In this document: positions 5,205-63,810 of the stretch, piece after piece
Layout of the letters: each line of letters opens with the position of its first letter
Position numbering within the stretch: position 1 is the stretch's first letter
Virus record (IMG/VR): IMGVR_UViG_3300009545_000018
Coordinates: 383,764 to 447,763 of that record
DNA length: 64,000 bases
Strand: one strand, 5' to 3'
Program-made: the position numbers and the translations under genes
Notes under the pieces: generated by a model
Told to the model about the DNA's origin: nothing
Databases searched by the model: none
What the model saw: the letters and a program-made list of their open reading frames with translations, nothing else

Positions 5205-5407
5205 TTATATGACCGCCGAATTGTCCAGTGAGATATCTAATTTAATTGTTATTCGCAATTATATTGATACTAATATAAATAGCGATACCATTTCTAGAGA
5301 AGAAGTAAATCAATTATATATTATAATGAAGAAAATAGATCGTAAAATAATTGATTTACTTCTATCTAAAGATCTGAAAATATAATTCTACATTAAGGTA
5401 AGTTACA

Positions 5408-14700: not shown

Positions 14701-15471
14701 AGCCACGTTTTCAAATGGAGCATATCCAAGACTTTTTTCTATTCTAGCATATCCATCCATAGTAATATTGCCAGAAGGAGAACTAATTAATGGTGCTGTA
14801 GCAGAGTTTAATGTTCTAAATATAGCATTGTTTAACTTAATATCTGTTGAAACAAATGGCAAACTAGCTATTATATTTGGAGTAGATGTTGCAGCTCCCA
14901 ATACTCTTAGATTTCTAAATTCATAAGAGTTTCTTAAAACTGCACCTTCTGGTAATTGCATAGAAGGTAATATAGATGTATCTCCAGCATAACCTTGAAT
15001 AATAGTATTTTTACTTAAATTCCATGTGCCAGCTGGAATACTAGCTGGTGAAGATAATGAATCATCAATAACAATAGTGGCTAATCCATTTACAGCATTT
15101 CTTGCAGCCATTAATAATGACCAAGAGGTATAAATATTTCCAGTAGCAACACCTGCTGGTTTATAAATAAAAACTTGTCCACCTTGAGGACCAGTTGGAC
15201 CAGTAGGTCCGGTTGGACCAGTAGGTCCAGCAGGTCCTGTTAGTCCTGCAGGTCCTGTAGGTCCTGTTGGACCTGTTGGTCCTGTAATTCCATTTGCTCC
15301 ATTAGTACCATTAGTTCCAGGTGTGCCTGGAGCCCCAGGAGGTCCAACAGGACCTGTTGGTCCCGTTGGTCCAGTGGGTCCAACACCACCTCCACCACCA
15401 CCACCACATCCTCCTGGATCTACTGTTGGTAAAGAATCTGGATCATCATATGCATTAGGATATTTAGTCAT
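11800..15471 (-). CDS. Collagen-like long fibre protein
   Basis: GPT triplet run near N-terminus; the same [10 protein letters not shown] and [16 protein letters not shown] repeats as ORF 7866; starts MTKYP. Confidence 0.75.
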
Positions 15472-15543
15472 ATTTAGTACCTACACGTTATACTTTAGTA
15501 TACTAAATTTTTAGTATATAATAATATTAGAGGTATAAAACTT

Positions 15544-18500: not shown

Positions 18501-18576
18501 TATTGCATGGAATGGAACAAGCTCACCTCAGGACTTATCAGCCACCATTTTTGATTTTACTGTTATAAAAACATAA
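15544..18576 (+). CDS. Collagen-like fibre/tailspike protein with probable beta-helix domain
   Basis: Starts MTKYP; GPT/GPI triplets; tailspike-like DGNDYSPAW motif followed by a Gly/Asn-rich beta region. Confidence 0.7.
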
Positions 18577-34895: not shown

Positions 34896-35135
34896 TTAAA
34901 ATAGTTTCCTAATGAATTTAATTAAATTACTACCTGCTGAGTAAACAGCTAATTTTAATTCTTTTTTTCCAGCTAATTTGTGTTTAACTCCTACTGGGGA
35001 GTGATGTTTATATAATTCAGCTGCTTGCTCTGGTGTTTCTGCTAAAACTCTATAAGTAACAGTGGCTGGTAGCATACATTCAACTTTTACATCAAAATAG
35101 AACTTTTGGGGAGGTTGTAATTTATCTTGTTTCAT
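34896..35135 (-). CDS. Hypothetical protein
   Basis: 79 aa ORF coupled to its neighbours. Confidence 0.6.
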   Translation of the reverse strand: MKQDKLQPPQKFYFDVKVECMLPATVTYRVLAETPEQAAELYKHHSPVGVKHKLAGKKELKLAVYSAGSNLIKFIRKLF

Positions 35136-36697: not shown

Positions 36698-36698
36698 T

Positions 36699-37211
36699 TT
36701 ACTTTCCTGTACTACCAAATCCACTAGCTCCACGACTAGCATTCCTATTTTTACACAAGACATCATATTCTTCATTTGATATTTCTTCAACAATCATTTC
36801 TTTTCTTTTGACAGGAATAATTTGCCCCAAGGCATCCCCAAAATTAATTTCTAACTTTTTACTATTACTAAATGAAGTTTCATTATTAGTACAAATAATA
36901 GCTTCAGGTATATATTGGCAAGCTAATAATAATTCTCCTTCATAGGTTTCATCGATTGTACCATATAAACAGTGCAATCGTTTTTTACCAAATGTTGAAG
37001 ATCTTGGCTTTAATTCAAACCACCAACCCTCTGGGCAAAAAGTTCTAAAACCTAATGGAATAATAGCTTTCTCAAAAGGAGAAAGCGATAAACTTGTGGC
37101 TGCTCTTACATCCCATCCTGTGGCATGTGGCTCTGCTTTTGTTGGTAAAAACTCTTTATTATTTTTTAGATCTTCTCTTAATGCAAACTTAAAATTTGGA
37201 ATTTCTGACAT
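36699..37211 (-). CDS. dut: Trimeric dUTPase
   Basis: GWDVRA, PRSS, GTIDETYEG, RGASGFGSTG. Confidence 0.93.
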   Translation of the reverse strand: MSEIPNFKFALREDLKNNKEFLPTKAEPHATGWDVRAATSLSLSPFEKAIIPLGFRTFCPEGWWFELKPRSSTFGKKRLHCLYGTIDETYEGELLLACQYIPEAIICTNNETSFSNSKKLEINFGDALGQIIPVKRKEMIVEEISNEEYDVLCKNRNASRGASGFGSTGK

Positions 37212-39869: not shown

Positions 39870-41600
39870 TATTTAATAAAATCTTGGATGGATTATATTA
39901 TTACGGAACATGTATTTTATGTGATGGTAATATGTCTATAAATAATGATGGATTTAATTACCAACCAGCTTATAATAATTGTGGTTTCAATTTAGTATTT
40001 AATCTTGACAAGATGGATAGACTTGTTGTAGATCCAATTTCAGAGTCTGTATATATAAATTATGAACCGGAAGAGTTACTTTTTTATAATAATGATGTTG
40101 ATGATTTTAAAAATATATATGGATATAATGATTGTTTTACAACTATAATAAAATGTAAGAATTGTGATAAGTTTGCGTACTCTATAGATATTCATATTGA
40201 TTTATATGATCAAAAAATATTACATAGTAATTTAAATGATATTACTTGTAATTATAAAGAAAAATATTGGATAATGAATAATTATTATCAAAATACAACA
40301 ACATTATTAAATGATGTTAATGATGAATTGATTAAAGTGCCATTAATTACACTAGAAAAACAAAATATTAATTATATTTTTAATCGTTTACAAAAATTAA
40401 TTATTTTCTCCTAATGCTATATGTAGTGGCATGTTATCTTCAAATTTTTTAGAGCATGGTAAAACGTGCCCAATTTGTAATAAAAAATTGTCTTTATATG
40501 CAATAGTAGGTGAAATAGGAACTTTTAAATGCAATAACAATTATGTTGCAAATAAAAAAAGAAAACTTAATTTTTATCCATTAAGAGATAAAATGTTTTT
40601 ATTACACTCAAGTGTGAATAAAACTGACAATTTTGTAATTAAATTAATGGATGATAATAAATTTGATTTTACTTTCTCTTCTGAGAATTTATTTAAAACT
40701 ATAATTAAATCTAATATAAGTTTTTTTTATATTTGTAATCTATCTTCATTTTATAATGAAACAAGCTATTCTATTAATAGCTATAATGTTGACGGGTTTA
40801 ATGCATGTTATTATAAATTATCCAGTATTCTTTCTTTTAATTATAAAGACGATAATTTAACCCTAACAAATTATAATTCAAGTTCATGTCATTTAGAAAT
40901 GTTCTCTCTATTAGAAGATAATAATAAATATTCTTTGATTTATAATTATGGAACTCAAAAAACTCTATTTTATTTTAATGACTCTAAAGAAAACAATATA
41001 GAACCATCCTTCTTTAAAGAATTTGATATTTTAGAATATTATCCTGATTTTACTAATCATTCTAAAGTTTTGAATAAATTTAAATCTTGGGTTCTATTAT
41101 CATAAATGATTACTATTAATGATTTTATAAATAGCCGAAATCATTGTTTCTGTTGTGGTTCAAATTTAGAAATCTGTATAGAAAGTTTTTCTTTACAAAA
41201 AACACCTTCTTTATTATTAAAAAACAATATATTATTAATTAATTCATCTTACTTTGATATACATATAGATTTATTAAATAATTATGTAATAAAAGGTTGC
41301 GATAAATCACATTGGGAATTTAAACTGGTATTATTTTGTCCTTTACATAAAGAGTTGCCAAAAGATATATATAAGTATGAACTTATTTTTGATATTTATT
41401 GTGGAAAAATAGCCAATGAAACGCCTATAGAATACCTAATGACTGATAATTTTATTTTACAGTCATTTCCATCTCTAGATGAGATGGAATATGTTAGTTT
41501 AAAATCCAACAAAAAAATTACATTTCCTTACTTTGATTATAGTCAGATGTCACTACCAAAGTTAAAGAGTAAACTAAAGACATATTTGTTAATGCAATGA
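39866..41600 (+). CDS. Three Zn-ribbon array proteins (39866-40414, 40431-41105, 41106-41600)
   Basis: N-terminal CxxC; tails KLIIFS, KSWVLLS, KTYLLMQ. Confidence 0.7.
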
Positions 41601-42676
41601 ATACATATCAAAAAATAATGGCTTGTGAAGATAAATTTCAAGCTATCCAAAAAATTATCTCAATAGATGAATTTACAAGAAGACTTTCAGAAATTGATCA
41701 TATTTGTAACGATCCTACTACATGGAATGATCATAAAGCTGCCGCACGTATCATGAAAGAACGGCAAAAAATATCTGATGTAATAAGTAAATATACTTAC
41801 TTTAAAAATTGGGTTCTCTTTTTTAAAGAGATAGTAAATGAACTTCCAGAAGAAATACAATCGTTTAGCCAAGAATCTTCTACTCTGCTATCAGAATTGT
41901 CTGCATTTGAGATTAGTCAGATTTTTAAAGAAGAGTCTGATGATTTGCCTGCTATCCTCTCTATCAATGCCGGGGCTGGTGGTTTAGAGGCAGCAAATTG
42001 GGTTACTATGCTCTTACGTATGTATGCTAGATATGCCAGTAATAATAATTTCAAAGTAGAAATTTTAGACACCAAACCATCTGAAGAGCATAGTTCTATT
42101 TGTACTGATTCAGTATCTATTAGAATAGAAGGTACTTATGCTTATGGTTTTTTTAAAAGTGAGTCTGGTGTACATAGGTTAATACGTAACTCTCCATTTA
42201 GTTCAAATGATACTAGACATACATCCTTTGCTGCCGTGTCTGTTATGCCAGATATAGAAGACACTATTGATATTAATATTTTAGATAAGGATTTAGAAAT
42301 AACTGCAATGCGGGCGGGCGGTAGTGGAGGACAACATCAAAATAAAACTAATAGTGCCGTTAGATTAAAACACTTGCCAACAGGGATTAATATTGCTGTT
42401 AGAGGTGAGAGAGATTATCATCAAAATAAAAGAACAGCTATGAAGATGTTGAAAGCTAAATTATATGAAATTGAGTTAAAGAAGCAACAAGAAGAAAAGA
42501 ATAAACATTTAGATGCTATGCAAGATGTAGCTTTTGGTTCTCAAATAAGAACTTATACTATGAGTCCCACTCAAATAGTAAAAGATCATAGAACAGATTT
42601 TGAATGTAATAATACTAATAATGTTTTAGATGGAGAAATTGATGATTTTATTAGTGCCTATTTGCATATGATGTAA
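41597..42676 (+). CDS. prfB: Peptide chain release factor 2 (no internal frameshift)
   Basis: AGAGGxEA, ESGVHRLIRNSPF (SPF specificity motif), RHTSF, GGQ, FGSQIRTY. Confidence 0.93.
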   Translation: MNTYQKIMACEDKFQAIQKIISIDEFTRRLSEIDHICNDPTTWNDHKAAARIMKERQKISDVISKYTYFKNWVLFFKEIVNELPEEIQSFSQESSTLLSELSAFEISQIFKEESDDLPAILSINAGAGGLEAANWVTMLLRMYARYASNNNFKVEILDTKPSEEHSSICTDSVSIRIEGTYAYGFFKSESGVHRLIRNSPFSSNDTRHTSFAAVSVMPDIEDTIDINILDKDLEITAMRAGGSGGQHQNKTNSAVRLKHLPTGINIAVRGERDYHQNKRTAMKMLKAKLYEIELKKQQEEKNKHLDAMQDVAFGSQIRTYTMSPTQIVKDHRTDFECNNTNNVLDGEIDDFISAYLHMM

Positions 42677-49291: not shown

Positions 49292-49904
49292 AATATAATG
49301 TCATAGGATGCTGTCAAAGGGAGCAAAGTGTTAGAAAGTGGGAGGGTGTGGGAAGATAGCTGAATTAATGTCTTTTAATGTTTTGGCTGTCATTTGGGGT
49401 GGAATAGGATAGAAAGAGAAGATAAGTTATACTTTGATTTAGAAGGTTTAAGGAGGAAAGTAAGATTTTGGATTGGTTTGAACTGTATTATAGAGCTTAT
49501 AGATGGTTTGATGTGTTTAAAATAGCTGTAGACCGGGTCCCCAGCCGCCTCGGACCGTCAAACTCCCCACCTTTTCACTGCTGCTACAATACAGGGTTTG
49601 GCATACTCTCTGCATTATTCAATTAACATACCAATTATTCTTTTATAAGTCTTATTAATTAATTATACTTACATTACAATCATTTAATAAACATTATTAA
49701 TCATTTATGGCATCTTTCTTGCTTTCGCTGTTATTTTGCCTCACTGAACAGCTTTTCAGCCCTTTTAGTAGTCTTGGTACAGTAACTGCAAGATGCAAAG
49801 CCTATACCATGCCATAGCAGTCATTCCAGTTACACTGCACTTACCCATCTTTTAACGGTTAGTACCTGATTAATGTAGCGGGTAGCTGAGATAAGGAGAT
49901 TACT

Positions 49905-50096
49905 ATGGCACAATTCAAGATTTTGTCTCAAGTCAATGGTTCTTGGTTGGAGCAGGGGAAAGATCTCGGCGGTACTACTGTTATGAATCAAGCTGCTCAA
50001 TTGGAAAAGCAGGGATTGAATGTTCGAGTTTTCCGAACTGATATTCCCAAGTTCATTTATGAAACGGGAGCAGGATACCACGGAATCTGGTACTGA
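49905..50096 (+). CDS. First small gene of the motif block
   Basis: AAGGAG SD; follows motif 49844; ends before a terminator. Confidence 0.75.
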   Translation: MAQFKILSQVNGSWLEQGKDLGGTTVMNQAAQLEKQGLNVRVFRTDIPKFIYETGAGYHGIWY

Positions 50097-50102
50097 AAGA
50101 AT

Positions 50103-50130
50103 AAAGGAGCCTAAGGCTCCTTTTCTTTTT
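50103..50130 (+). terminator. Intrinsic terminator
   Basis: AAAGGAGCC-TAA-GGCTCCTTT with T tract. Confidence 0.85.
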
Positions 50131-50244
50131 ATCTTTGTGGTATAGGATTTGCTTATTGCAATTAATATACCAAGACTTTTTAGATAAAAGAGCTCTACCC
50201 ATCCTATAACGGAATCAAAGCAGCTATTGTAAGGTAGGTATCAT

Positions 50245-50616
50245 ATGGAATTCACCTATGAGAATGATGAAGGGGAAGACATTACAGTCACCTTCCCTAG
50301 TGTTAAGGTAGTTTGCCCAAGGTGTAAAGGGCACGGAACCCACCTTCACAATGATATTGGTAGCTATGCTTACAGCGTAGAAGAATTCCAAGATTCCTTT
50401 GATGAAGAAGAACAGGCAGAGTATTTTCGCCATGGTGGAAGATATGACGTTCTCTGCGAACGCTGTCACGGTAAAAACGTGGTGGATGAGATTGACGAAG
50501 AGAAGTGTCAGCAGGATCCGGCTTTGACAGAAGCCTGGCAAGCTTTTTGTCAGAAAGAAAAGGATGATGCTGATTATGAAAGACTCTGTGAATCAGAGCG
50601 GCGCTTTGGTTGCTGA
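50245..50616 (+). CDS. Acidic protein with CxxCxGxG Zn finger
   Basis: CPRCKGHG...CERCHGK. Confidence 0.75.
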   Translation: MEFTYENDEGEDITVTFPSVKVVCPRCKGHGTHLHNDIGSYAYSVEEFQDSFDEEEQAEYFRHGGRYDVLCERCHGKNVVDEIDEEKCQQDPALTEAWQAFCQKEKDDADYERLCESERRFGC

Positions 50617-50653
50617 TTGAGATCCCATCCTATAACGGATTACTGCTAATAGT

Positions 50654-53199
50654 ATGACAACCCTGCAGAATCTCAAGAAGCGTGACTTGTCTTTTGCTTA
50701 CCAGATTGCAGTGGCAGACTGGAAAAAACTTTCTGCTATGTGTTCTGGGCAGTCAGCTGACGATCTGGCTAATGGCTTTCATGGTAAGTCATTGGCTGGA
50801 GTGCTGTTTGATTCGGAATTGGCAGTGGATCAGATTGCAGCTAAGCTGGATCGGTTGAATCCTTAAGGGATTGAAAGGGAGGTTTACCTCCCTTTCTTTT
50901 TAATTGATGCTGGTATGCCGTTTGCATATTGCAATGTTCGAGCCAACCGTCATAAAGTTTGCTTTAAACTTGTTCCCATCTGATAACGGATAGATCCTAA
51001 TAGTATAGTTTTTCTGAGGGTTCTGACTAAAAGTAAAACCCTCCCCCTTTACGTTGCAAACAGTAACTGTAGTAGGCAATAAGCTTCCAGTTATATTGTA
51101 ACAAAGTTTGGCGGTATCTTAAAACCGCCACATTTTTTAATCCCATCATTTAACGGAAAGGTCTAAGTAATATGAATACTCTTTTTAAGTTGGTTGTTGT
51201 GATGTTGGCATTGTTTGCCGTGACTTTCTTGATTCAAACCTATGCCAATTCTTGGTTTCATCAAGTGGCATTCACGGCTCCTATCATTGGAACCATGAGC
51301 TATGCAGCTTGTACCATTGTGGCAGTAGGTTGTGTGTTGCTGTCAAAGCTGCATTGGGGCAAGTAATGTTAGGTTTCGTGGTGTTTTGCCTGGTAGGTTT
51401 TTTTACTGGGCATTGGGTAGTGGGTGGTATTATTGGAATTGTAGTATACGCCCTAAATAAGTAACTCCCATCAATAAACGGTTGAATGTTATTGATATGA
51501 CATATCATCCCAGTTACCGAGCAGTAGATTCTGTTGGTACTGAATGTGAAACTTTTGAACATGAGTATCAAGCGGTAGACTATTGGACTGGTGCTCCTAC
51601 TGGAATTGATATTCAATATTGGAATGGTTCTGAATGGGAAGAATATAATCCTAGGACTTTCACTAAAGATTAATTCCCATCAATTAACGGATTGTACCTA
51701 GTTATTGAGATGCAAAACCTAAAAGACCGATTGGAAAAGTTAGCAGATTCTTTTAAGGGTACTACCAATTCTTTTGGTAGGTTTACCGTCACCAATGTAG
51801 GTTGCGGGATTCTGAGAGTTGATGGTGAAGGTGTGCAGTATACTCCCGATGTAATATTGGGTTTTCTCAATCGACACGGCATTAAGTAATTCCCATCAAT
51901 AAACGGATTAGATCTATTAGAAAGGATAAAAAAGATGAAAGCATTCAATTGTTATATTGTCAAGCGCAAGGGCAAAGTCATCAAGGGTGAGAGTCGCAAG
52001 CTGCGCAATGCAGCCAAGCGACAACGTCAAGGTCGCTAAACCAAAAGAATGAGAGCTTAATTGTTCTCATTCTTTTTTAATTGGTCTTGGCATATGCTTT
52101 GCAACTTGCAATAAGCTTGCCAGGCGTTATATTTTTATATCCCATCTATTAACGGAAAGACATACTAAGTGGAGGCTGGTAATGTTCATTAAGATTAAAG
52201 CTTTGTTCAAGCTGTATGATCTGGGAATCATTAGCAGCGAACGTTTATCCGAAGCCTTGGTAAAGCTCTCCCCATCTGATAACGGATAAAGATTATTAAT
52301 TATGAATACTCTAGAATTCAGCCGAGCTTGCCGAACAGAGTTTGCTGCTTTGCCGGAAGCCTATCGTAATGACGATGTCTTGGAATTCTGGTTTGAGGGT
52401 GGGCTTTGGTATTGCCGCCCCAAACTATCAGAAGTAACAATTCTAGGAAACTGGGAATGTTATTATAGTGATGGTGTATGGGAGAATCAAGAAGCCCATC
52501 TTTAAACGGATGATAGGAGTCTAATATGAAAGCCAGGACTCAGTATCTGATTAATGTTTATGTCACGTTGAATAGTGCTGGTCGTAAGGATCAATTCCGC
52601 CGGGGTCGTTACAATGACCCGGAACACTCTGCCATAGCTTGGGGTGGGGTTCATGGTCCTCTTTTGGGCTGCGAACCTTCCGCTGAGGAATTGCAAGAAT
52701 TGGTAACAGAGGGTTACATTACAGTTAAGTCCAATGGCGCTGTAACTCCTACAGCTAAAGCTAAGGCGGCTAGGACTGGAAGCTTAGGCAGTATTAGTCC
52801 TTAATACCAATGAATAGTTTAGAGCCTAAAGAGACAGAAGATCAACGCAGAGCCCGATTAGCATCAAGAGAAGATCTAGCGTGTTTAGAGTGCCACCATA
52901 GGGTTTGCTTATACTTTTGCTCTAAGAGAGTTAAAAAGCGTCCCATCAAGTAACGGATTAGTGTATCTAATATGAAGTACCTAGATGAAAAGTCTGTTAC
53001 TGCAGTGCGTCGAACTAAGCCTCTAGCAGTTAGGACTAGGTCAGGATATGGGAGTAAACTTCCAACTGATATTATGCTGCAATTGAATAAGCGTTGGTAT
53101 CGGGTCTATGTGATGATCTATTCTAATGCTGGTTCGGCATATATCTTGCAAAAGGGAGAAAAGGTTTTGCTTGGGTCCTATGATCCTCAACCCATCTAA
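50654..53199 (+). CDS. Small motif-associated genes: 50654-50866, 51172-51366, 51366-51464, 51497-51673, 51710-51889, 51935-52039, 52182-52289, 52302-52505, 52526-52804, 52810-52953, 52972-53199
   Basis: Each starts just after a motif or is coupled to the previous gene; products unknown (two are hydrophobic). Confidence 0.65.
50873..50901 (+). terminator. Intrinsic terminator
   Basis: GAAAGGGAGG/CCTCCCTTTC with T tract. Confidence 0.85.
51005..51138 (+). ncRNA. Candidate small structured RNA
   Basis: ORF-free unit between motif 50975 and a terminator; stems GAGGGTT/AACCCTC, GTTGCAA/TTGTAAC, TAACTG/CAGTTA. Confidence 0.5.
51109..51138 (+). terminator. Intrinsic terminator
   Basis: TGGCGGT/ACCGCCA with T tract. 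Confidence 0.75.
52043..52078 (+). terminator. Intrinsic terminator
   Basis: AAAAGAATGAGAGC/GTTCTCATTCTTTT. Confidence 0.8.
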
Positions 53200-53210
53200 T
53201 AACGGATTCC

Positions 53211-53241
53211 AGGGGAGCTGTAATGGCTCCCTTTTCTTTTT
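53211..53241 (+). terminator. Intrinsic terminator
   Basis: GGGAGCT/GGCTCCC with T tract. Confidence 0.8.
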
Positions 53242-53330
53242 GGTGGGGTGGCAAGGCTTTTGCATATTGCAAGGCTCGTGCCACGCCCCAATAACAACCC
53301 ATCTATTAACGGATTAATAGGTATTATGTA

Positions 53331-53446
53331 TCCGATTGGTTGGCACCTTTTTAGTTAGTAGTGAAACATAATTCATTAGCTTTCACTGGCAATTAATGAA
53401 TTATGTTCTGACTAAAACTAAGGTTCGATTCCTTAGAGTCGGGCTA
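53331..53446 (+). ncRNA. tRNA-like RNA with greatly extended central arm
   Basis: CCGATT/AGTCGG acceptor-like stem, TAAGG-TTCGATT-CCTTA T-arm, long central stem. Confidence 0.55.
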
Positions 53447-53479
53447 ATTCCCATCTAATAACGGTAGAATATAATTAAT

Positions 53480-56400
53480 ATGAATCGCACTAAGCAAAAC
53501 CTAGATTCTGCTAAGATGCTGGTTGCTAAAGCTCTGGCTATTCTGGCGCAAGCTGGTTTGGCTCAACGATAGAGAAGACAATGAAAAAGCCCAATCAAGA
53601 ATTGTTTCGGCTGCTTCGTTTTGCCATTCGTTTTCCAGGCTGGCACTCTTACGATTCCAGTGTAGCTAAACATATCAAAAGGGCAGCTGCATTGGAATTT
53701 CTGGAAGTTGATACCAAAACCAAACAATTCCGATTGATGCCAAGTCAATGGGCGGAAGACTTTCGCAAAGGTCCCATCGTTTAACGGTTGAGGGTATCTA
53801 ATATGAATCTCAATAAAAGAATCAAGCTGGATCGTTCCTTCGAACTAGCAGAAGATTCTGCTAAGCCTGATATTACTGGAACCATTGTGGGCTTGGGACA
53901 TATTGTCGGCATAACAGTTTATATCGTGGAACTGGATCAAGGTTTCTATTCGCCAGATAGGCGAATCTATATTAGCAGAATGGTAGTAGCAAGGGAAAGC
54001 CTTCGTCCCATCGAATAACGGGTGAAGGTAACTAACTGGGGACTGAAACCCGAGCTGACCGAAAGGAAAAGCTCCATATAGTATTACTGGATGAGATCCT
54101 AATCCGGGTTGTAAAAGAATAACGGTTGGTACCGTTTACAATCATGTCGAAAGACCTTAGGCTGGCGAAGTAAGTCCCCATCATTTAACGGCGGAAGATT
54201 AATAACATGAGGAAAAACGCTCAAAAGGTTCTGCAAGCTTTCAATGCTGGGCAGGCTGCTAATGAGAAAACCATTAGCACCAATGGTAAGGAATTGTTTT
54301 CCTACGCCATGTTGATCGCCCGCAAGAATGGCGATAAGGTAGAGCTTATCGATTATAGTAAAGCTCCCAGCAACACTACCCGCAGTCAGGTTAACGCAGT
54401 GCGGCAATTCTTTCCTGCTAGTCAGATTGTGGTAGTGGAGAGTTTCTAAAAACAAGTTTTCCTAAAACTTGTTCCCATCCTTTAACGGAATAAGGCTCTT
54501 ACCATGAGAGTTGGTCCTGCTACACTATCCTACTTGAAACGTTTGGGCGATGAGGAAGCTGCTTTGATGTTGAAAGCCGGTTCATTGGTTTTCAGTCAAG
54601 CTCAAAAAGCAGGTTTGACGCCGGGTTTCTTTTTCATTCAAGGGCAACTGAGAATGGTGCCAGTACCCAAAACCTTTGCAGTGAGTCCCATCTTCTAACG
54701 GAAGGATCCTTCTAATATGGAAGAGTTAATGGATCGAGCCCGGGAATGGGTCAATGAGAATTATCCTCACTTGGAAGGCGATGACTATTCCGCCAAGCTA
54801 GAAGAGACACTATGGGATCTGGCGGAGATTGATGGCACGGATCCTATTAACTATCTGACTTATTATAATTAATTACACTAAAGCAATAATTGAGGTTTAA
54901 TGATTCGAGCCCCGCCGAGCTAGGCGTCTCTAATGTTTAATAATAGTTGATTGAATTTATAAGATTACAGTTTGAGAGGAATGGGGAGAAGGCGACCTTC
55001 TCCCCATTCCAATGTTATACATTGGTATAGGCTTTGCATCTTGCAATCCTTATACCAACCTTGCTATTATCTTTCCCATCCAATAACGGAAGCATTCAAT
55101 TAGATATGACAATTAGTTATCACAAGCGAGACTTGCAACATGCCCAAAAGATTGCAGAAGCAGAAAAGTACCATATCCTGAGTTTCAGTGACGGTGCAAA
55201 CTCCGCGGAGCATCTAGTTCGGGTAGTAGAACTGGAAAACGATCTTCGTCGTATCTCTCAACAATTGAATCCCATCAAGTAACGGCTAGAGACATAATAT
55301 AAGAAACATGGCAAAGTCAAACAAGTACTGTAGGGATTGTGAGTGTTATCATCCGGCAGGCGATTGTAATGGTAATGATCGTCGGCAAGATCATAAGAAG
55401 CGAGAAAAGGTCAAGCAAGCCGAAAGCCCCATGTTCTTCTATGATCAAGATCCAATGTTGATGGATCCATAAAAACCTGTTCCCATCTGATAACAGTTAA
55501 TGTAAGTGGTTGTATCATTGAACGCGGCGTAAAAGACTATAATTAATAAGGTTCACGCGGGAAAAAGATAGTCTTTCCACTTTTCCATCTAATAACGGCT
55601 CCTAGATACTAATTGAAAGAATAAAGACAATGTTTTATGTAACCAAGAATGACGCGCAATACATCATGGCTGCCCTGCTGATTCCGACCCTGCTGGGCTT
55701 TTACTCTCTCTGCCTTTACTTCTAAAAACTTAATAGGCAGTTTAGAATAGCTGCCTATCTTTCTTCCGGTTTAGCTCAGTTGGCAGGGAAACATTAATGA
55801 CAGCTAATTGGTTGCATAATGTTTCCCATCCATTAACGGTTGAAGGTGTCTAATATGACTTGGAATAAAGAACAGATTAGGATTGCCATTCAAACCCGTG
55901 ATGTTGTGGTAGAGCGTGCCATTGTTGCTATCTATCAACGTCAGACACTAGACGAACAATCCTCAGAAGAAACCAAGCATTCTAATGGAGTTGGTTTTAG
56001 TGGGGCGCATGCACGTTTGGGCACGTATTATGCCAAGTGGATTCTTCAGGGACGTCACTTAACCGGAAACCATCTAGTCAAAGCTCGTGCCATGGCATTG
56101 CATTACGTAGGACAATTAGAGCAGATTGCTGCACAAGTTTAATTCAAACTTGTTCCCATCTATTAACGGATTGATATTACTAATATGGATTACCTAACTC
56201 GTAACATTCAAGACACTGGTAGCAAAACGGTTTTGATGCCAGCCAGCCACGTTCGTGGGAGCACCATTATCTTTTGGACTTGCTGTGTGTTCTGGACCAT
56301 TGCCGCCATTGCTTATCACAGCATGCACTGAACCAAGATGCATATCTTCCTGTTAGTCATTATGGCATACTGTCATGTCTCCTGGGAATCTACCGATAGG

Positions 56401-57052
56401 GGACAGCCTGTTTATGATGCTAACGGGTATAACTACAGTGACAATGTTATCTCCTGTCATATCGATCCCATTGAGGATAATATAACAGAACAACGTCACC
56501 ATATTACTTGCTGGGGCACTGATAAGCAGGTAGTGGTAGATCGGTCCTTGCATTGTGATAAGCAGCAGATTGAAGATTACATTGAAGTGCAAAGCTTATT
56601 CTTAGGCTGTAAGTATCACTGAATGTTAGGCATTATTCTTGCCGCTGTAATTCCGATAGTAATACCAGTTATTATTAATTGTTTGGATTACTTCATAGAT
56701 TAAATCCCATCTGATAACGGAGAAGGGTTTGTAGGCATTATCAAGAGGGAATTTATATTACTGAACATTCCAATATGTTGGAGTTGATTAATCGTTGCAA
56801 TAAGCTTGCAACCTTACAGACAACTATTACATGGATGTATGTAGTTGTCTGAGTTTATAACGGCACTGTAATGGTGCCGTTTCTTTTATGCGCGTGTTGG
56901 TACGTGCTTTGCATATTGCAATAAGCTTGCCAACCATCCGTCAAGCCAAATTATTATCCCATCTAATAACGGAAGGATACACGTAAATGAAGCTAAAGTT
57001 AATAGGTCAAGGTACACACACTCGTAAGGGTGCCGCAATCTATGGCGACTAA
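53480..57052 (+). CDS. Small motif-associated genes: 53480-53572, 53581-53784, 53803-54018, 54207-54449, 54504-54698, 54717-54872, 55106-55282, 55308-55472, 55630-55725, 55855-56142, 56185-56331, 56338-56622, 56987-57052
   Basis: Starts re-assigned to the ATG about 15 nt after each motif where present; products unknown. Confidence 0.65.
54037..54180 (+). ncRNA. Candidate multi-stem structured RNA
   Basis: Closing stem TGGGGACT/AGTCCCCA, GAAA tetraloops, several nested stems. Confidence 0.6.
54978..55010. terminator. 15-bp perfect hairpin without a U tract
   Basis: GGAATGGGGAGAAGG-CGA-CCTTCTCCCCATTCC. Confidence 0.6.
56736..56887 (+). ncRNA. Candidate small structured RNA
   Basis: ORF-poor unit after motif 56706; GTTGCAA/TTGCAAC and CAGACAACTA/TAGTTGTCTG hairpins, then a terminator. 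Confidence 0.4.
56859..56887 (+). terminator. Intrinsic terminator
   Basis: AACGGCAC/GTGCCGTT with T tract. Confidence 0.8.
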
Positions 57053-57149
57053 TCCACATAGGTTGTTCTGATTAGAGAATAGCTTTAAAAGCTCCGAACA
57101 CTTTAGCTTCCCATCCTATAACGGTTTCATACTCTGATTGAGATACACA

Positions 57150-57518
57150 ATGAAGATCGAATGTACCACTGAGGAATTGGTAGCGCTGCAACGTACCACG
57201 GAACTGGAATCCTTGCAATATGAAGTAGTAGCATTGCGAGAACGGAATTCTTCCCTGGAAGATCGGATCGCTAACCTGAAGGATCACAACACTGACCTAC
57301 AGCGGGAATTGGTGAAGCCGGCAGCTACTATTAATGGCGCCAGTATGCAGCAAGTTTCGGATCTGTTCAAGGTATACTTGGGTGGTGCCAATAGGGAAAC
57401 CCCTATTGGAGCCCAAAAGATCGCTGCTATCAAAGCCGTTCGTGAAGTTTTCAAGTGCGGATTAAGGGAAGCCAAGTTTATCATTGAAGGTAACTTGGAA
57501 AACGAGCGATACGGCTGA
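57150..57518 (+). CDS. Coiled-coil protein with ribosomal protein bL12 (L7/L12) C-terminal-like domain
   Basis: KIAAIKAVREVFKCGLREAKFIIE matches the bL12 KIxxIKxVRxxxGxGLKEAKxxVE signature. Confidence 0.7.
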   Translation: MKIECTTEELVALQRTTELESLQYEVVALRERNSSLEDRIANLKDHNTDLQRELVKPAATINGASMQQVSDLFKVYLGGANRETPIGAQKIAAIKAVREVFKCGLREAKFIIEGNLENERYG

Positions 57519-57556
57519 ATAAACTTCCCATCCTTTAACGGTTGATTGCATTCAAT

Positions 57557-60500
57557 ATGGATCCTGAGCAATTGATTCAGCAAAGCGCGGCTTCTGGGGA
57601 AACCATCAAGATTGATTGGAATGTCAAAGTGTTTTCTCACTTGATGCGCCGGTCTCCTATTTACACCGAATATACAACCTTCACGGAATTCCAGGGTAAA
57701 GAATTGGATAAGTCCTGGTGTATCCAATTGATACATTAACCCATCCTTTAACGGTTAGAGACACCTAACATGACATTCGATAAAGGACAGCGAGTCAACA
57801 CTCCTAATGGTCTTGGTACTATTAATTACCAAAGGATGGTACCGCCCGATTACAGTGAAGCTATGATAGTTTCTGTCTTTCTGGATTCTCGCCAATTGGA
57901 TCGGGACTTGGGAAAGTATTCTGGAACTATCTTTCCGGCAGATGTTGTTACTCCCATCCAATAACGGACTACTAATAATAGTATAAGACAAATGGTAAAA
58001 ACCAACCACCATAACGAATGGTTTCGACCCGTTACCAAAACCACTTGCTCTTGCGGTCAAAAGAAAACGCAAGTTTATAGTTGGGGAGAATATGTGTGTG
58101 CCAAGTGGCGCACCATTGACTATGTGTGTCAAAACTGTTTTCCGATTGTAAGCGAACGTTTACAGCAGCATAAAAAGGAATGCGGCTGTGAATTTAAGCT
58201 AATTGGTTATCGCGGCTGTAGTTTGCCTGACTGGCTTAAAATGCCTGTGCAATCTTGCCAGTTTTCCCATCAAGTAACGGTTGAAGATGTCTAATATGAC
58301 TAAGCAACAAGCTCTGCAGGACTTTAAAGAAAACGTACTGCCGGCAGTCAAACAGCAATATCCACATGATAAGCATGCTGTTATTCAAGCTTGGAATGAT
58401 TACACTGACAGCTTGTGTAAAGACCGGCAGATTACCGCCAAGCAATACCATAACTGGTCCAATCCTTTTTGAGCCTCATGTCTAAGTGTGAACATGTATT
58501 TCCACGTGTAGCTAATTACGAGTTATTAGGCACTGGTGGCAAAAGGATTATATGGTCCTGCAATAACTGTCTTTCCATCAAGGTTCACTTCATTAATGAT
58601 GTAAAAGTTAATGATAAATGGACTACATATGAAAAAACAGTCATAGTAGACTGTTTAGATTACGATCCTGATCCCATCCAGTAACGGTTAGGTACAACCA
58701 ATATGACAACTATGTATCTAATACGCGATACCACTGGCAAGATATTGTCGAGTTGCTCTTTCAATTCCGTTGCAGCTTTATGTGAAGCAGTTAAGGTCTG
58801 GCATTATTTGGGCAACATTAGCGCCGATAGCTATGGTGTTGTAGTTATCTTTTAGTTCCCATCCTATAACGGCTAGGTACAATTAATATGAGCCAGTTAT
58901 CCGAAGCCCTAAAAAAAGTCGCTGCTATTGCATCTTCTACCTACCTAGGAGAAGAGACTGAAAAGTATAGTCAAGGCAGCGGTACTTACAAGGTTAATAA
59001 GTGGAAAGTAGAATTGTCTTTCCAGGGGCGCCGATATACTTGTCCCTTATATAAGACAGGTGAAGGTCTTCGAAAGAAAAAGTACAGCTTTAATAGCAAG
59101 CTGGGACAATGGGGTAATTTTCCCGTTGCAGGATCAAACCACCCTGATGTAGCTGACGTTATTCATTGTCTGATTACTGATACTCATTGCGGCATGATGG
59201 CATTCGACGAGTATTGCAGCGAGTTTGGACTTGATACTGATTCCCGTGCTGCTTTCAAAGTGTGGGAGCAATGCGTGGAAACTGCTGGACCTTTTAGACG
59301 GTTTCTAGGTTCGGAGTTTGATCATCTGTCAATGTTGGAACACTAATGAAAACTTACAGGCTCAAAGAAAACCATCCCACCTATCAGAAATTTCTTAAGC
59401 TATATAATCTAGCTGAGAAGTTAGGTATCTCTCTTGAATTTATTGGAGATCAATGTTTTTTGGTAGATTTTGATCTGCCTAAGATACGGTTTCAAGTGAA
59501 AGATATAGAGCCTAATCATATCTTAACTTCGTTTCCTTATCCAACGGAATTTGAGATTACATATCAGAAGCCCCATCCATAGACGGAAGTGTGTATTTAA
59601 TATGCGCAACTATCAAAGCATGATTGAGCGACGAAAAGCGGAATTCCAAGATCATTTCTCGGATGTTGGATTGTCCAAACAGTTCATTCAATATTACGAG
59701 AATGGCAAGCGTATCAAGGTGCGGTTTCCCGATGGTCGTACAGAGTGCGGTACCGTTGGAGTTACAACCGGTTGGGTCCCTTGCTTTCTGCTAATGCATC
59801 GCAGTACTGATACTGGAAGCTCTACAGTCTTGGCAGACATGGATAAGATTGTGGGCGTGCAAGTCAGTAAGAAGTACGTTACGCCGTGAATGGAAAAGGA
59901 GCATCTGCTCCTTTTCATTTTGCCCAATATGGTATGTGCTTTGCATATTGCAGCATTCGTACCACTACCTCCGGGGCAAAAAACAAACTCCCATCACATA
60001 ACGGGTTGATACTAAAGGTAAGAGATATGAAAGTTAAAGTGTTTCCCGTCAATGGCAGCTATACTATCTGTGCGGTTTTACCTAACGGCAGCATGGATCC
60101 GCATTATCCTGCTATTACGGATATTGCGCATCATGGTAATGCGCAATACATTGCGGACAGAATCAATGAGGCTTATCGGGCGGGTGAAACCAATAAAGCC
60201 ATTGAGATTCGAAAAGTCTTGGGTCTTTTATATTAATCCCATCTTCTAACGGATGAATGCAATTAATATGGCAAAACAATATCCCTGTGATGGTTTTACT
60301 CGACTCACAGAAGAATCAGACTTGGTTCCAGGTACCGTGCTTCGCATGGTTAACTTTATCGATAACCCTGCTGTTAGCGCTCCCTTTTCCGATTGTGTCA
60401 TTACTAAAGTAGAAGATGGTATTGTCTACCTGAATCGTCCCATGGGATGGTCCAATGGCAAAACTCATACAGAAGAGTTTTGTGCCTACACTACCAGGGT

Positions 60501-62428
60501 TGTCAAGTTCTGGCATACTGTACTGACCGCTAGTGGTAAGCCTTATAGTATGTTTGGGGTGTAGTTCCCATCCTGTAACGGAACCAGTATATTAATTATG
60601 GATAGATTTACAAGGTGTCTGCTACTAGGTCTATTCTTCTTTGTTCTAAACGTTCTTTTATATAAGATGTTTAGGTTGGTTTATTGGGAACGTACAGTCA
60701 TTACCTCTATAGTAGCACTTTATGTCGGTTGGTTTCATGGCAGTTGGTTTTTCAAAAAAAGAAATAAACCCATCCAGTAACGGATATTATCTTCCTATTG
60801 TAAGAAAGTAAAAGACAATGGAAATTCTTTCTCATTCTCGCAGTGTTAAGGTAGAACAATACAGCTTGTGTTTCGATTATATCGGAGCCAGCAAGCATCA
60901 TGGTTTCTCGTTTGACTGCAATGCAGCTGGAGAAGTAGATGTTGTGGCTTTGCAGAAAAAGCCGGCAGCATATGATAACTATCTGAAATGTCTGTCAGGC
61001 GAGCATAAGGTTCATGCTCCTTACGTTCAGGACTTTTCGCATCGTTATACCGAGCCGGCAGTAGGTCGGTGTGTCTGCGGCTGCAAAGTAGAATTGGCTC
61101 GTTTTACCAATACCTGCGATGGTTGCAATCGGGATTACAATTACAGCGGAGATCTTTTGGCACATAGAAGCCAATGGGGTGAGGAAACTGGGGAAAGCTA
61201 CTGTGATATTCAGGACCTGTAATGAAAAAGCGCAATCGCTGTAAGTGTAAAAAGTGTGGTACGATTATTGAATCCAAACATCGGCATGACTTTGTTTACT
61301 GTAGATGTAAGTCCATTTTCACTGATGGTGGAACTGATTACATTAGAAGGGGAGGAGATCTTTCTTTAATTGAGGAAGTTCCAGAAGATAACAACATCTC
61401 CTAACGGAATATATTATGAGTTACGAACTAAGCTTCAGTGAAACATTCTTCTTCGGCGAATGTGATCCCTACGAAACTGACATTACTGCAACACCTACCA
61501 GTGTGTATGCTGCTATCTGCTGCTGTAAGGAACTGGATCCTGACAAGTGGCAAGACATTGCAGCGGAAGTCTTTCAAGTAGAGCCGGATCTATTGACAGA
61601 GGAAGCTGTCATGAGAAAGATTCGTAAAACCGACACATGTTCTAACTTGAACGTGCCTGTACGGGTGTGGATAGATGAACAGGGTTGGTATAAACTAGAA
61701 GTGTATTGATCCCATCTGATAACGGTGGAGCATATCTAATATGAAGATTACAGCAGATCGTTTCAGTGAGCTATCTCTTTCGATTCAAGATCAAGCCACT
61801 AGTCTTTACAATAAGGCTTTTCGTTTGGGCTTTAATGCCGAGCTTGGCGCTAAAGATGGTGGCACTGAAACTGTCATTAGCATGATTACGGAACTGGAAT
61901 CTACCTTGCGGGTATTGAAACGACGCCTGCAGGAAACCCTCCCATCCTCTAACGGGTAGAGATACTTATTATGCAAGCCAGTCTTTGTGATTCAGATTGC
62001 AGTGAAAATGCTGTCATAGCAATCCTTCAAGGTGAAGGTGCTGCTAAGTTTGCCAAAGAGACATGTCAATCGCTCAATGGTAGCAACTGGGAATGTGATG
62101 GCAATGATTTTGCCTATTGTCTCACGGAAAACTGTCCAAGCTTATTGGAAGAATTCCAAAAAGACTTGGGCGATATTGAGATAAACGATTCTGAGTATAC
62201 TCCCATCACATAACGGATAATAAATATAATATGTTAACTCAAAAGGGAATGGAAATTCTGTTGAAGATGTATTCTCTACATCGCAGCAATTTCTTAGAAA
62301 CTCATGATGGTTGCAATCGGAATGATTGCGAGCGGGATTTTCTCCATAACATTCTGTCGAAAGTTTCCGGTAGTTATAACGAAATTGTCTATGCCAAGTT
62401 AGCTAACGAGATTGAAAGCATTCGATGA
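57557..62428 (+). CDS. Small motif-associated genes: 57557-57739, 57770-57964, 57992-58294, 58296-58472, ~58478-58684, 58703-58855, 58888-59346, 59346-59582, 59602-59889, 60027-60236, 60268-60564, 60598-60780, 60818-61222, 61222-61404, 61416-61709, 61741-61959, 61971-62213, 62231-62428
   Basis: Same unit architecture; several are Cys-rich Zn-binding peptides (57992, 60818, 61222). Confidence 0.7.
59893..59921 (+). terminator. Intrinsic terminator
   Basis: GAAAAGGAGC/GCTCCTTTTC then ATTTT. Confidence 0.75.
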
Positions 62429-62823
62429 AAGCTGTACTACTAGGATTGTTACTGTTAGGTTGCGGAGATCATGATAATCCTCCTCCGGAAGCCCCTAAGT
62501 TTTGCATTCAACCCGCCGCCACTTATGTAGAAAGTTTTAGTCCGGTCTATGGTAGTTGTCCAGGTTTACCATCAGTTTTGATTACCATTCCGGAAGATGG
62601 AAGTTTTCCAATCAATACGGATGAAACCTGTCATGTTAAGGTAGATGGTTGCAAGGCAGACAATACTGGGTGCGTGTATCAGAGTGACGGCTGCACTATC
62701 AAGTCTGATACCACTGTCACCTTTAAGGATGATGGTACTGCAGTAGGCTATATGACAGTATCGACAGCTAAGTGTGGATACGACTGTATGGGTATCTATG
62801 AGTTGTACTTAGTTAAGCAATAA
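62425..62823 (+). CDS. Cys-rich lipoprotein
   Basis: MKAVLLGLLLLG-C lipobox. Confidence 0.75.
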   Translation: MKAVLLGLLLLGCGDHDNPPPEAPKFCIQPAATYVESFSPVYGSCPGLPSVLITIPEDGSFPINTDETCHVKVDGCKADNTGCVYQSDGCTIKSDTTVTFKDDGTAVGYMTVSTAKCGYDCMGIYELYLVKQ

Positions 62824-62825
62824 CT

Positions 62826-63776
62826 ATGGAACTGGTAAAGTTAGGCGCTAAGCAAGGCACAGAATGCTGTACCTGTAGAAACAGGATTAAGCATAACGAG
62901 ATCTGTTATCGAAAACAACGCTTAGCCGAAACTTATCACGAACGATTACATGCTAACGGTAAAGGCATGGTTCAATGGTACCATCACAAGTCATGCATTG
63001 AAAAAATTCCCATCTGATAACGGATACCTACGAGTAATATGAGTAGCAAATGCACAGTTAAGAAAGCCAAAGAGTTGAATGCCTATGACATTAAATTCAA
63101 GCTAACGCAGGGAGAATTAATTGCATTGTACAATGCATTAAAACGATATTCCTCTGCTTCTACTGGAGGCGCGGCTGTACACGCTTATCTGTGTAATAGT
63201 TTGCAAGAGCTGTCTGTGGAACATGGCGTCAAGTTTCCCATCGACTAACGGAAGAGCTTATTTAATATGCTAAGTATGAAGGTAGAGACGGTTGTTAACG
63301 CACTAGTTACTCAATTGCTGTCAACGGATCTATATAATGAAGCAATTCATTTCCACTTGGATTGCCGGCTCAATTACTTTGAGGATGGCAAGCGTAATTA
63401 TCGAACGGCACGCGCCTTGCATTTGCTATATCAGCGTCATACGGGAAGCACCTATATCAGTGCCTTTTCTGCTGTCTTGGATAATCCATTCGATAAGATT
63501 GATAAGGTCAAAGATTGGAATCATGAATGCACTCATGACTACTGCTGGCGTAGTGTAAACTGTTTCTCTGCCGTCTATTTTTCTATGGCAGAAGATATTA
63601 ATCGTCAGTTGGTAAAAGCTGGATTGTCGGAAGTAGCACCCATTGATATGAGAGAGTTTAACTCTTTTGGTGGCATTAGCGGAAATGTTTTCCAATTGGT
63701 TCCAGTCAAGGTAGAACTGGATCCTACAGACAAGAATCATCATAGAAGGATGATAACAGTTTCTCCCATCCTTTAA
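62826..63776 (+). CDS. Three small genes (62826-63017, 63039-63248, 63267-63776)
   Basis: All end inside the next motif (IPI, FPID, SPIL). Confidence 0.7.
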
Positions 63777-63810
63777 CGGAATAGTGCTTAGATTATTACC
63801 AGGAAAGTAA

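What the first reader, a model, noticed from the sequence alone, without database searches (positions are those of the whole stretch)
54037..54180. Compact multi-stem RNA occupying one motif unit
Seen: TGGGGACT starts exactly 16 nt after motif 54007 and pairs with AGTCCCCA, which overlaps the next motif. Internal helices are AACCCG/CGGGTT, GAGCT/AGCTC around CC-GAAA-GG, GGA-TGAGA-TCC, TTGTAAA/TTTACAA with AACGGT/ACCGTT, and GTC-GAAA-GAC. There is no plus-strand ORF. Inference: an unannotated ncRNA or ribozyme. I cannot assign it to a known family.
Basis: partly seen in the sequence, partly recalled or inferred. Interest (0 to 1): 0.7.

Follow-up and report, generated by a model that had tools for sequence, protein, structure and literature searches.

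The report
Orphan structured RNA unit, huge phage
One slot in a long row of tiny early genes of a 448-kb phage holds no gene but a 144-base stretch that folds into a compact closed RNA shape; it is probably a small non-coding RNA, but no relative was found, so this rests on folding and position alone.

Summary
The window is the last 64 kb of a 447,763-bp phage record. From 49.8 kb onward, and across the record's ends, lies an array of about 90 small plus-strand units. Each is headed by (T)CCCATCNNNTAACGG, usually with ATG exactly 15 nt after it.

In the unit 54007-54191, TGGGGACT sits where the ATG should be. There is no plus-strand ORF of 20 aa or more.

Positions 54037-54180 fold at -43.7 kcal/mol (z -2.9). 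The 8-bp closing helix P1 and two hairpin domains are robust and persist in a 444-nt context.

ORF-poor units in this array are much more structured than coding units. Relatives also have ORF-less units closed by a motif-to-motif helix.

There is no match in Rfam, including the self-cleaving classes Rfam holds. There is no paralogue, and no significant homologue in roughly 0.87 Mb searched with a covariance model. Covariation therefore cannot be tested, and no RNA run was listed.

One borderline hit lies inside a real small protein gene. A decayed-gene origin was tested and not supported.

Verdict: a plausible orphan structured RNA cassette; function unknown; ribozyme unsupported.

The parts
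54007..54021 (+). Upstream copy of the unit-heading motif CCCATCGAATAACGG
   Evidence: 47 copies in the window, all on the plus strand, against 1.8 expected by chance. 96 copies genome-wide with up to 2 mismatches.
54022..54036 (+). 15-nt spacer GTGAAGGTAACTAAC, equivalent to the short purine-rich leader that precedes ATG in coding units
   Evidence: ATG lies 15 nt after the motif in most units. Here TGG occupies that place.
54037..54180 (+). The structured element (144 nt)
   Evidence: MFE -43.7 kcal/mol, z -2.88. The same fold appears within 444 nt of context. The covariance model R1 finds only this copy in the genome.
54037..54044 (+). P1 5' strand TGGGGACT
   Evidence: Pairs with 54173-54180; pair probabilities 0.54-1.0.
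54173..54180 (+). P1 3' strand AGTCCCCA, whose last 4 nt are the first 4 nt of the next motif
54052..54074 (+). Hairpin GAGCU-GA-CC-GAAA-GG-AAA-AGCUC (GNRA tetraloop)
   Evidence: Pair probabilities 0.96-0.99.
54087..54107 (+).
   Evidence: In the MFE, but the competing pairings all have low probability.
54108..54142 (+). Long hairpin GUUGUAA...UUACAAU with the inner ACGGU-UGGU-ACCGU; contains GAATAACGG, a repeat of the motif's 3' half
   Evidence: Pair probabilities 0.87-0.99. The sequence is read directly.
54147..54168 (+). 3' irregular hairpin; the alternative GUC-GAAA-GAC tetraloop hairpin lies at 54146-54155
   Evidence: In the MFE; the GUC/GAC alternative has probability 0.15.
54177..54191 (+). 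Downstream motif copy CCCATCATTTAACGG heading the next gene
   Evidence: One of only 4 of 90 copies with C instead of T at -1.
54207..54449 (+). Next unit's gene (80 aa), with ATG 15 nt after its motif
   Evidence: Weak match to phrog_554 (E 0.0011). No other homologue among 5.8 billion proteins.
53803..54018 (+). Previous unit's gene (71 aa), ending at the TAA inside motif 54007

Best explanation
The unit 54007-54191 is a non-coding cassette in the early-gene array of a huge phage. Its payload is a roughly 145-nt RNA rather than a small protein.

Shown: the array, the fixed 15-nt spacing, the absence of a plus-strand ORF, the fold and its robustness to context, and the excess structure of ORF-poor units.

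Inferred: the element is transcribed on the plus strand together with its neighbours, within the stretch between the terminator-like hairpins at 53211 and 55733. It folds into a closed body whose 5' and 3' ends are joined by the 8-bp helix P1, around two robust stem-loop domains. A closed form of this kind would resist exonucleases.

It would then act as a small stable RNA. Alternatively, because P1 hides the first bases of the next motif, it could act as a cis element that tunes use of that motif. Expression, the RNA's ends and any target are all inferred.
For: - Position: the structure starts exactly where the ATG lies in most units and ends in the next motif. Among 77 units only this one and the unit at 56958 have a perfect start-to-end helix of 8 bp or more.
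- Folding: z -2.88 on the plus strand and -2.0 on the minus strand. The fold is unchanged in 444 nt of context, z -3.18.
- Class effect: ORF-poor short units have a median z of -3.95 against -0.94 for coding units. The seven most structured of 38 units are all ORF-poor, and the focal unit ranks seventh.
- Precedent for RNA payloads behind the same motif: it precedes tRNA genes at genome positions 12015, 71737 and 76021. Relatives carry ORF-less units closed by 8-22-bp helices. One such RNA family shows compensatory changes and recurs in L011 (twice) and L047 (124 bits).
- Not coding: no plus-strand ORF of 20 aa or more. There is no protein similarity in any frame. The antisense ORFs have no family match.
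Against: - It is a single sequence. The only other copy, L009, comes from a second sample and differs from this genome at 2 of 13,706 bases.
- R1 found no homologue at a significant E-value in the roughly 0.87 Mb searched: own genome 448 kb, G001 118 kb, and loci L010-L022, L041-L052 and L055-L066. There is therefore no covariation evidence.
- No RNA sequencing run was listed.
- A z-score of -2.9 is modest. Some coding units reach -2.5 to -2.8.
- Part of the excess structure of ORF-poor units comes from terminator hairpins, which this unit lacks.
- There is no terminator at its 3' end, so a discrete RNA would need processing.
Confidence: 0.45

Rival explanations
1. It is a decayed gene cassette or plain spacer with no function. 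A small early gene lost its start codon and frame, and the remaining 155 nt happen to fold well.
For: - These arrays turn over quickly. Cassettes are shuffled between relatives, and the neighbouring gene has no homologue anywhere.
- The best covariance-model hit, L041:9972-10120 (13.1 bits, E 0.066), lies inside an open 68-aa ORF. That ORF belongs to a real small-protein family with 30 representatives at E <= 0.001.
- The focal frame 'ETRADRKEKLH' matches 'EVRADRKEENH' of P0043.
- A frameshift-tolerant comparison gives p = 0.04 against shuffles.
Against: - Against 501 natural windows of the same region, the frameshift-tolerant score lies only at the 5% (best member) and 15% (top-five sum) quantiles.
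- A profile of the family does not list the focal region among the six-frame pieces of the genome up to E = 100.
- The L041 unit is not an outlier among 322 units in nucleotide alignment.
- tblastn with the L041 protein does not hit the element.
- A neutral remnant would not be expected to give 1-in-200 folding, or an 8-bp helix joining exactly the two unit boundaries.
Confidence: 0.27
2. It is a cis-acting leader of the next gene (54207-54449). The structure is a long 5' leader whose helix P1 sequesters the first bases (CCCCA) of motif 54177, so it sets how much of that gene is made. It could also protect the downstream mRNA from decay.
For: - The P1 3' strand overlaps the motif by 4 nt.
- There is no terminator between the element and the next gene.
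- Short hairpins whose 3' arm includes the motif's CCC(A) recur in relatives (L042:1358-1389, L047:4355-4377) and in this genome (window unit 55584).
Against: - Occlusion matters only if the motif works at the RNA level, and this is unresolved.
- The rest of the motif, the spacer and the start codon of the gene at 54207 stay unpaired or only loosely paired in the fold.
- No riboswitch or leader family matches.
- The unit has its own complete upstream motif and spacer, like an independent unit.
Confidence: 0.18
3. It is a self-cleaving ribozyme, or a tRNA-like substrate for tRNA-processing enzymes, that cuts the early polycistronic RNA at this place.
For: - It has two GAAA tetraloop hairpins and a multi-stem body.
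- P1 (UGGGGAC/GUCCCCA) is identical to the acceptor stem of bacterial tRNA-Glu, and the following motif equals tRNA-Glu positions up to 19.
Against: - No model of the self-cleaving classes held in Rfam, and no tRNA model, reaches E = 10.
- ARAGORN finds no tRNA or tmRNA in the window.
- The helix is 'inside-out' relative to a tRNA, there is no T-arm, and the hammerhead-like box has an extra G.
Confidence: 0.06
4. The conservation or structure reflects a minus-strand protein gene (54032-54184, 50 aa, or 54099-54455, 118 aa).
For: Both frames are open.
Against: - Neither has a Pfam or PHROG match.
- All motif-headed genes of the array are on the plus strand.
- The 118-aa frame runs antisense to a properly spaced plus-strand gene with a PHROG match.
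- The ATG of the 50-aa frame is simply the reverse complement of CCCATCAT in the motif.
Confidence: 0.03

Closest known systems
PeSL cassettes (promoter-early stem-loop) of T4-type phages (Arbiol et al. 2010, PMC2839356; Comeau et al. 2014, PMC4122927)
   Same: A short conserved regulatory motif is repeated in one orientation between many small, fast-evolving early genes. Stem-loops adjoin the motif. Cassettes are shuffled between related phages at the motif.
   Different: The motif here is an unrelated 15-mer with a fixed 15-nt distance to ATG. Separate sigma-70-like promoters and terminators also exist in the array. The phage is a 448-kb phage, not T4-like. PeSLs are not described as carrying 145-nt multi-stem payloads.
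Small stable RNAs of phage T4 (species 1 and 2, rnaC and rnaD, in the tRNA region); from my own knowledge, not checked here
   Same: They are phage-encoded structured RNAs of about 120-140 nt and unknown function. They lie among early or tRNA-region genes and have paired ends.
   Different: The T4 RNAs are made by tRNA-type processing within a tRNA cluster.
Bacterial tRNA-Glu
   Same: GTCCCCATC...TAACGG at 54174-54191 equals tRNA-Glu positions 1-19 of Leucothrix and Obscuribacterales tRNA-Glu genes, apart from 3 variable bases. TGGGGAC at 54037-54043 equals the 3' acceptor strand.
   Different: There is no D-stem pairing, anticodon arm or T-arm. The strand order is permuted. ARAGORN and Rfam's tRNA model find nothing.
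Known self-cleaving ribozymes (hammerhead, twister, HDV-like, pistol, hatchet) in phage genomes
   Same: It is a compact multi-stem RNA with GNRA loops in a phage intergenic slot.
   Different: No covariance-model match even at E = 10, and no conserved catalytic core was recognised.

Membership tests
Any Rfam 15 family | Covariance-model score at or above the family's gathering threshold | tested here: not met
   There were 0 matches over the whole window. On 53950-54260 only noise appeared: 12-13.6 bits against thresholds of 38-81, with E >= 1.4.
Hammerhead and other self-cleaving ribozymes | Conserved catalytic core (for example CUGANGA plus GAAA around a three-way junction) recognised by the family model | tested here: not met
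   No ribozyme model is listed at E <= 10. The sequence has CUGGAUGAG, with an extra G. Cleavage itself was not tested.
tRNA or tRNA-like element | Cloverleaf with T-arm and D-arm; acceptor stem closing the body | tested here: not met
   ARAGORN finds 0 genes in the window and there is no Rfam tRNA hit. Only the acceptor-stem sequence and the 5' 19 nt resemble tRNA-Glu.
Conserved structured ncRNA (general criterion) | Homologues with compensatory base changes supporting the helices | not testable with these tools
   No homologue was found. R1 finds only itself in the genome. All hits in relatives have E >= 0.06. L009 differs from this genome at 2 of 13,706 bases and its copy of the element is identical.
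Expressed small RNA | Discrete transcript with defined ends | not testable with these tools
   Only one DNA run holds the region, and no RNA run was listed.
PeSL-like mobile regulatory cassette array (context) | Repeated oriented regulatory motif between small variable early genes, with shuffling at the motif among relatives | tested here: met
   There are 96 oriented copies. The same motif occurs in L011, L012, L017, L019, L021, L022, L036, L041-L044, L047 and L049. Homologous cassettes lie in a different order in L017, L019 and L022.
PeSL-like mobile regulatory cassette array (context) | The motif is an early promoter | not testable with these tools
   No T7-type or multisubunit RNA polymerase domain was found, though the control for PF00940 did not ring. 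One sigma-70-like gene was found. Sigma-70-like promoters and terminators occur separately in the array.
Small protein family LPvLG..GHYLW..FGWHDC..ED (seen in L041) | Significant similarity of the translated pieces to the family | tested here: inconclusive
   p = 0.04 against shuffles, but only the 5-15% quantile against natural windows. The family profile does not list the focal pieces.

The most novel reading that the evidence does not exclude
The 15-nt motif that heads every early unit copies the 5' end of tRNA-Glu. In this unit the RNA supplies the matching 3' acceptor strand in cis, rebuilding a tRNA-Glu acceptor helix. If this is not coincidence, the phage may punctuate its early polycistronic RNAs with minimal tRNA mimics that tRNA-processing or tRNA-binding enzymes read. 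The ORF-less structured units would then be a new class of motif-delimited RNA cassettes that guide or titrate that machinery.
Probability: 0.07. Interest if true: 0.85.

Novelty: new member of a known kind. Interest (0 to 1): 0.4.

Why it matters
If real, this is a new phage-encoded structured RNA carried as a cassette on equal footing with early proteins. It would show that the early "host-takeover" arrays of huge phages trade RNA payloads as well as tiny proteins.

The wider context may matter more than this single element. It has three parts:
- A clade-wide 15-mer with a fixed distance to the start codon.
- The 15-mer's identity to the 5' end of tRNA-Glu.
- Recurrent ORF-less units closed by a helix.

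If the element is only a decayed cassette, it is ordinary.

Tried and rejected
- **Rfam:** gathering thresholds on the window, and permissive E-value scans on 311 nt and on 14.3 kb, gave nothing.
- **tRNA/tmRNA scan:** none in the window.
- **Exact and degenerate DNA pattern scans:**
  - The 5' 19-mer finds only L009, a near-identical copy of this region (99.985% over 13.7 kb) from another sample.
  - Motif-based patterns in viral, metagenome and genome collections gave relatives (L011, L012, L017, L019, L021, L022, L036). In bacterial genomes they gave only tRNA-Glu gene arrays.
  - Two sub-motif scans gave chance hits only.
- **BLAST:** a distant search of GenBank phages gave nothing. blastn and tblastx against relatives and the own genome gave nothing.
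- **Covariance model R1** from the single sequence:
  - Only itself in the 448-kb genome and nothing in the 118-kb relative G001.
  - Best elsewhere is L041:9972-10120 at E 0.066. I reject this as not significant after all searches are counted. That region folds at z -0.66 and is a real protein gene.
- **Relatives through proteins:**
  - The neighbour gene has no homologue.
  - An early 114-aa protein gave 38 homologues. Contigs for nine of them were fetched, and six of those loci carry the motif array. None has the element.
- **Decayed-gene hypothesis:** profile search of six-frame pieces, profile-to-DNA alignment, frameshift-tolerant alignment against shuffles and against natural windows, and unit-against-unit nucleotide ranking. 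Not supported.
- **Stop-codon recoding:** no gain in ORF length when TAG is read through.
- **RNA evidence:** none was listed.
- **Failed steps:** relatives cannot be drawn for a virus record.

Full report
**Where the element lies**

The window is the last 64 kb of a 447,763-bp virus record that CheckV rates complete. The first 49.8 kb have about 29% G+C. They carry ordinary large-phage genes: ribonucleotide reductase, PhoH, collagen/DUF5907 proteins, GMP reductase and a release-factor-like protein.

At 49.8 kb the G+C content jumps to 42%. There an array begins of small plus-strand units, each headed by CCCATCNNNTAACGG. The window holds 47 copies, all on the plus strand, against 1.8 expected by chance. 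The genome holds 96 copies with up to two mismatches. They are dense from 433.6 kb across the record's ends to about 15 kb, then sparse to about 76 kb.

In most units ATG lies exactly 15 nt after the motif, preceded by TAAT. The preceding gene often ends at the TAA inside the motif.

**The observation**

Motif 54007-54021 is followed by a 15-nt spacer. Then, where the ATG should be, comes TGGGGACT (54037-54044). It pairs with AGTCCCCA (54173-54180), whose last four bases open the next motif.

The 144 nt fold at -43.7 kcal/mol against -33.0 +/- 3.7 for dinucleotide shuffles (z -2.88; 1 of 200 as good). The minus strand gives z -2.0.

Pair probabilities show three robust parts:
- P1.
- The hairpin GAGCU...AGCUC with its inner CC-GAAA-GG.
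- The long hairpin UUGUAAA...UUUACAA with ACGGU/ACCGU.

Folding 444 nt around the element returns the same domain unchanged. There is no plus-strand ORF of 20 aa or more.

**Is it more than a chance fold?**

I compared all short units of the array. ORF-poor units have a median z of -3.95 and coding units -0.94. The seven most structured of 38 are all ORF-poor, and the focal unit ranks seventh.

Part of this effect comes from terminator hairpins. Strong terminator-like hairpins lie at 50103, 50873, 51109, 53211, 55733 and 56859. Three of them (50103, 53211, 56859) are followed by a recurring TTGCATATTGCAA-type sequence, and sigma-70-like promoter matches lie just upstream of the motifs at 52141, 55075 and 56958. 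The focal unit has no terminator.

Among 77 units only the focal one and the unit at 56958 have a perfect helix of 8 bp or more joining the ATG-equivalent position to the next motif.

**RNA payloads behind this motif**

- The motif also precedes tRNA genes at genome positions 12015, 71737 and 76021.
- Relatives that share the motif system are L011, L012, L017, L019, L021, L022, L036, L041-L044, L047 and L049. I found them through pattern scans and through homologues of an early protein.
- These relatives contain many ORF-less units closed by helices of 8-22 bp that start 12-20 nt after one motif and end just before the next.
- One such RNA shows compensatory changes between two copies in L011 and recurs in L047 at 124 bits.

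So RNA payloads are a real feature of these arrays.

**Homology**

- Rfam gives nothing and ARAGORN finds nothing in the window.
- The only other copy, L009, is the same phage from a second sample, with 2 differences in 13.7 kb.
- A covariance model of the element finds only itself in the 448-kb genome.
- It finds no significant hit in the 118-kb relative, or in about 300 kb of related or pattern-selected DNA.
- GenBank phages give nothing.
- The flanking gene has no homologue among 5.8 billion proteins.

Covariation therefore cannot be tested. No RNA run was listed.

**The one lead, and its test**

The best hit was L041:9972-10120 (13.1 bits, E 0.066). It shares the hairpin GAnnnGACCnAAAGGAAAAGnnnC with two compensated pairs. 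However, that stretch lies inside an open 68-aa ORF of a real, uncharacterised small-protein family. The family has 30 representatives with the consensus LPvLG..GHYLW..FGWHDC..ED and no Pfam or PHROG match. The stretch folds no better than chance.

By eye, the focal frames show 'ETRADRKEKLH' against 'EVRADRKEENH' of one member. I therefore tested whether the element is a decayed gene of this family:
- A family profile does not list the focal pieces among the six-frame fragments of the genome.
- A frameshift-tolerant alignment gives p = 0.04 against shuffles.
- The same alignment reaches only the 5-15% quantile against 501 natural windows.
- The L041 unit is not an outlier among 322 units at the nucleotide level.

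I conclude that the similarity is not beyond chance. The decayed-cassette reading stays as the main rival on general grounds.

**How it most likely works**

Shown: a motif-headed unit that is non-coding on the plus strand, with a compact, context-robust fold whose ends are paired exactly at the unit's boundaries.

Inferred: it is transcribed with its neighbours inside the stretch between the terminators at 53211 and 55733. Its payload is the RNA, either as a small stable RNA after processing, or as a cis element. The cis reading arises because P1 buries the first bases of the next motif. I put 0.45 on a functional structured RNA payload, 0.18 on a purely cis leader, 0.27 on a functionless remnant, and little on a ribozyme or an antisense gene.

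**An unexplained resemblance**

The genome scan for two motifs at unit spacing hit arrays of bacterial tRNA-Glu genes. The motif equals tRNA-Glu positions 4-19, and with the usual T before it, 3-19.

In the focal unit GTCCCCATC...TAACGG matches positions 1-19, and TGGGGAC matches the 3' acceptor strand. P1 is thus a tRNA-Glu acceptor stem in permuted order. Only 4 of 90 motif copies have C at -1.

The extra match is worth about 1 in 64. By my own rough count, the motif's match to some tRNA is worth perhaps 1-3%. This is a lead, not a finding. There is no T-arm, and no tRNA model matches.

**Comparison with known systems and novelty**

The array resembles the PeSL cassettes of T4-type phages in logic (PMC2839356, PMC4122927), but with another motif and in another kind of phage. 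The element resembles no described RNA family. If real, it is a new member of the known kind 'phage-encoded small structured RNA'. Its interest is moderate because it stands on one sequence.

Noticed in passing
window 49844-63779; genome 433607-447763 and 1 to about 76000: An array of about 90 oriented units is headed by (T)CCCATCNNNTAACGG, with ATG exactly 15 nt downstream in most units. G+C is 42% in the array against about 29% in the rest of the genome, declining gradually from 1 to 30 kb. The same motif system occurs in several uncultured relatives.
   Followed up: partly
window 54174-54191 and 54037-54043; L034:2900-3400 (minus strand): The motif equals positions 4-19 of bacterial tRNA-Glu (3-19 with the usual preceding T). 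The focal element's closing helix equals the tRNA-Glu acceptor stem in permuted order. The phage's own tRNA-Glu (genome 179769-179845) is one of only three places outside the array region (beyond about 76 kb) that match the motif on this strand with up to 2 mismatches, and it is a tRNA gene.
   Followed up: partly
window 53298-53464: An ORF-less unit has a perfect T-arm-like hairpin (TAAGG-TTCGATT-CCTTA) followed by an acceptor-like strand that pairs with CCGATT near the unit's start. ARAGORN calls no tRNA. It gets a weak hit from RNA model R2 (E 0.063).
   Followed up: partly
window 56958-57124: A second unit is closed by an 11-bp helix (GAAGCTAAAGT/ACTTTAGCTTC) from the start-codon position to the next motif, with an inner GNRA hairpin. 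It has only a 21-codon ORF and folds at z -3.97.
   Followed up: partly
L011:4673-4801 and 5102-5238 (minus strand); L047:404-538; weaker L044:2510-2622; genome 1575-1692: A structured RNA family (model R2) lies immediately upstream of the motif. It has a closing stem of about 19 bp with compensatory changes between copies and a conserved GCAACATAWTCCGC stretch. It is not in Rfam as far as tested on the window.
   Followed up: partly
window 50103-50123, 53211-53233, 56859-56881 and the 30-60 nt after each: Strong terminator-like hairpins are followed by a recurring TTGCATATTGCAA-type sequence. Sigma-70-like promoter matches lie just upstream of the motifs at 52141, 55075 and 56958. The array thus seems to be cut into multi-unit operons. 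TTGCATATTGC also recurs four times in relative L043.
   Followed up: partly
genome 12293, 21678; window 49844, 55482; L011, L041-L044, L047, L049 units: Several ORF-less units carry a start codon directly followed by a stop codon (ATG TAA, GTG TAA) at or near the canonical start position: 11 of 63 ORF-poor units against 21 of 268 coding units. TAATA at +11 to +15 is kept in units without an ORF.
   Followed up: partly
genome 212881-213035; window 41597-42676: There are two adjacent tRNAs with anticodon CTA (they read TAG) among 37 phage tRNAs, and a protein with PCRF and RF-1 domains. Reading TAG through does not lengthen ORFs more than chance, so there is no sign of genome-wide recoding.
   Followed up: partly
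L041:9945-10151; P0041-P0070: An uncharacterised small-protein family (about 45-80 aa; consensus LPvLG..GHYLW..FGWHDC..ED) has no Pfam or PHROG match. It is also present as 4-7 repeats in proteins of 500-2300 aa.
   Followed up: partly
genome 2921-3265 (L005:1532-1876): An early 114-aa protein has 38 homologues at 60-79% identity. They lie on contigs with the motif array (L041-L044, L047, L049) and on contigs without it, including L037/L038/L039 (P0021, a protein also recorded on a 475-kb contig), L045 and L046. This makes it a useful marker for the clade.
   Followed up: partly
window 35132-36793 (minus strand); 7866-9473; 11800-18576: There is a 553-aa protein with a LAGLIDADG domain, and very large collagen-repeat/DUF5907 proteins.
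   Followed up: no
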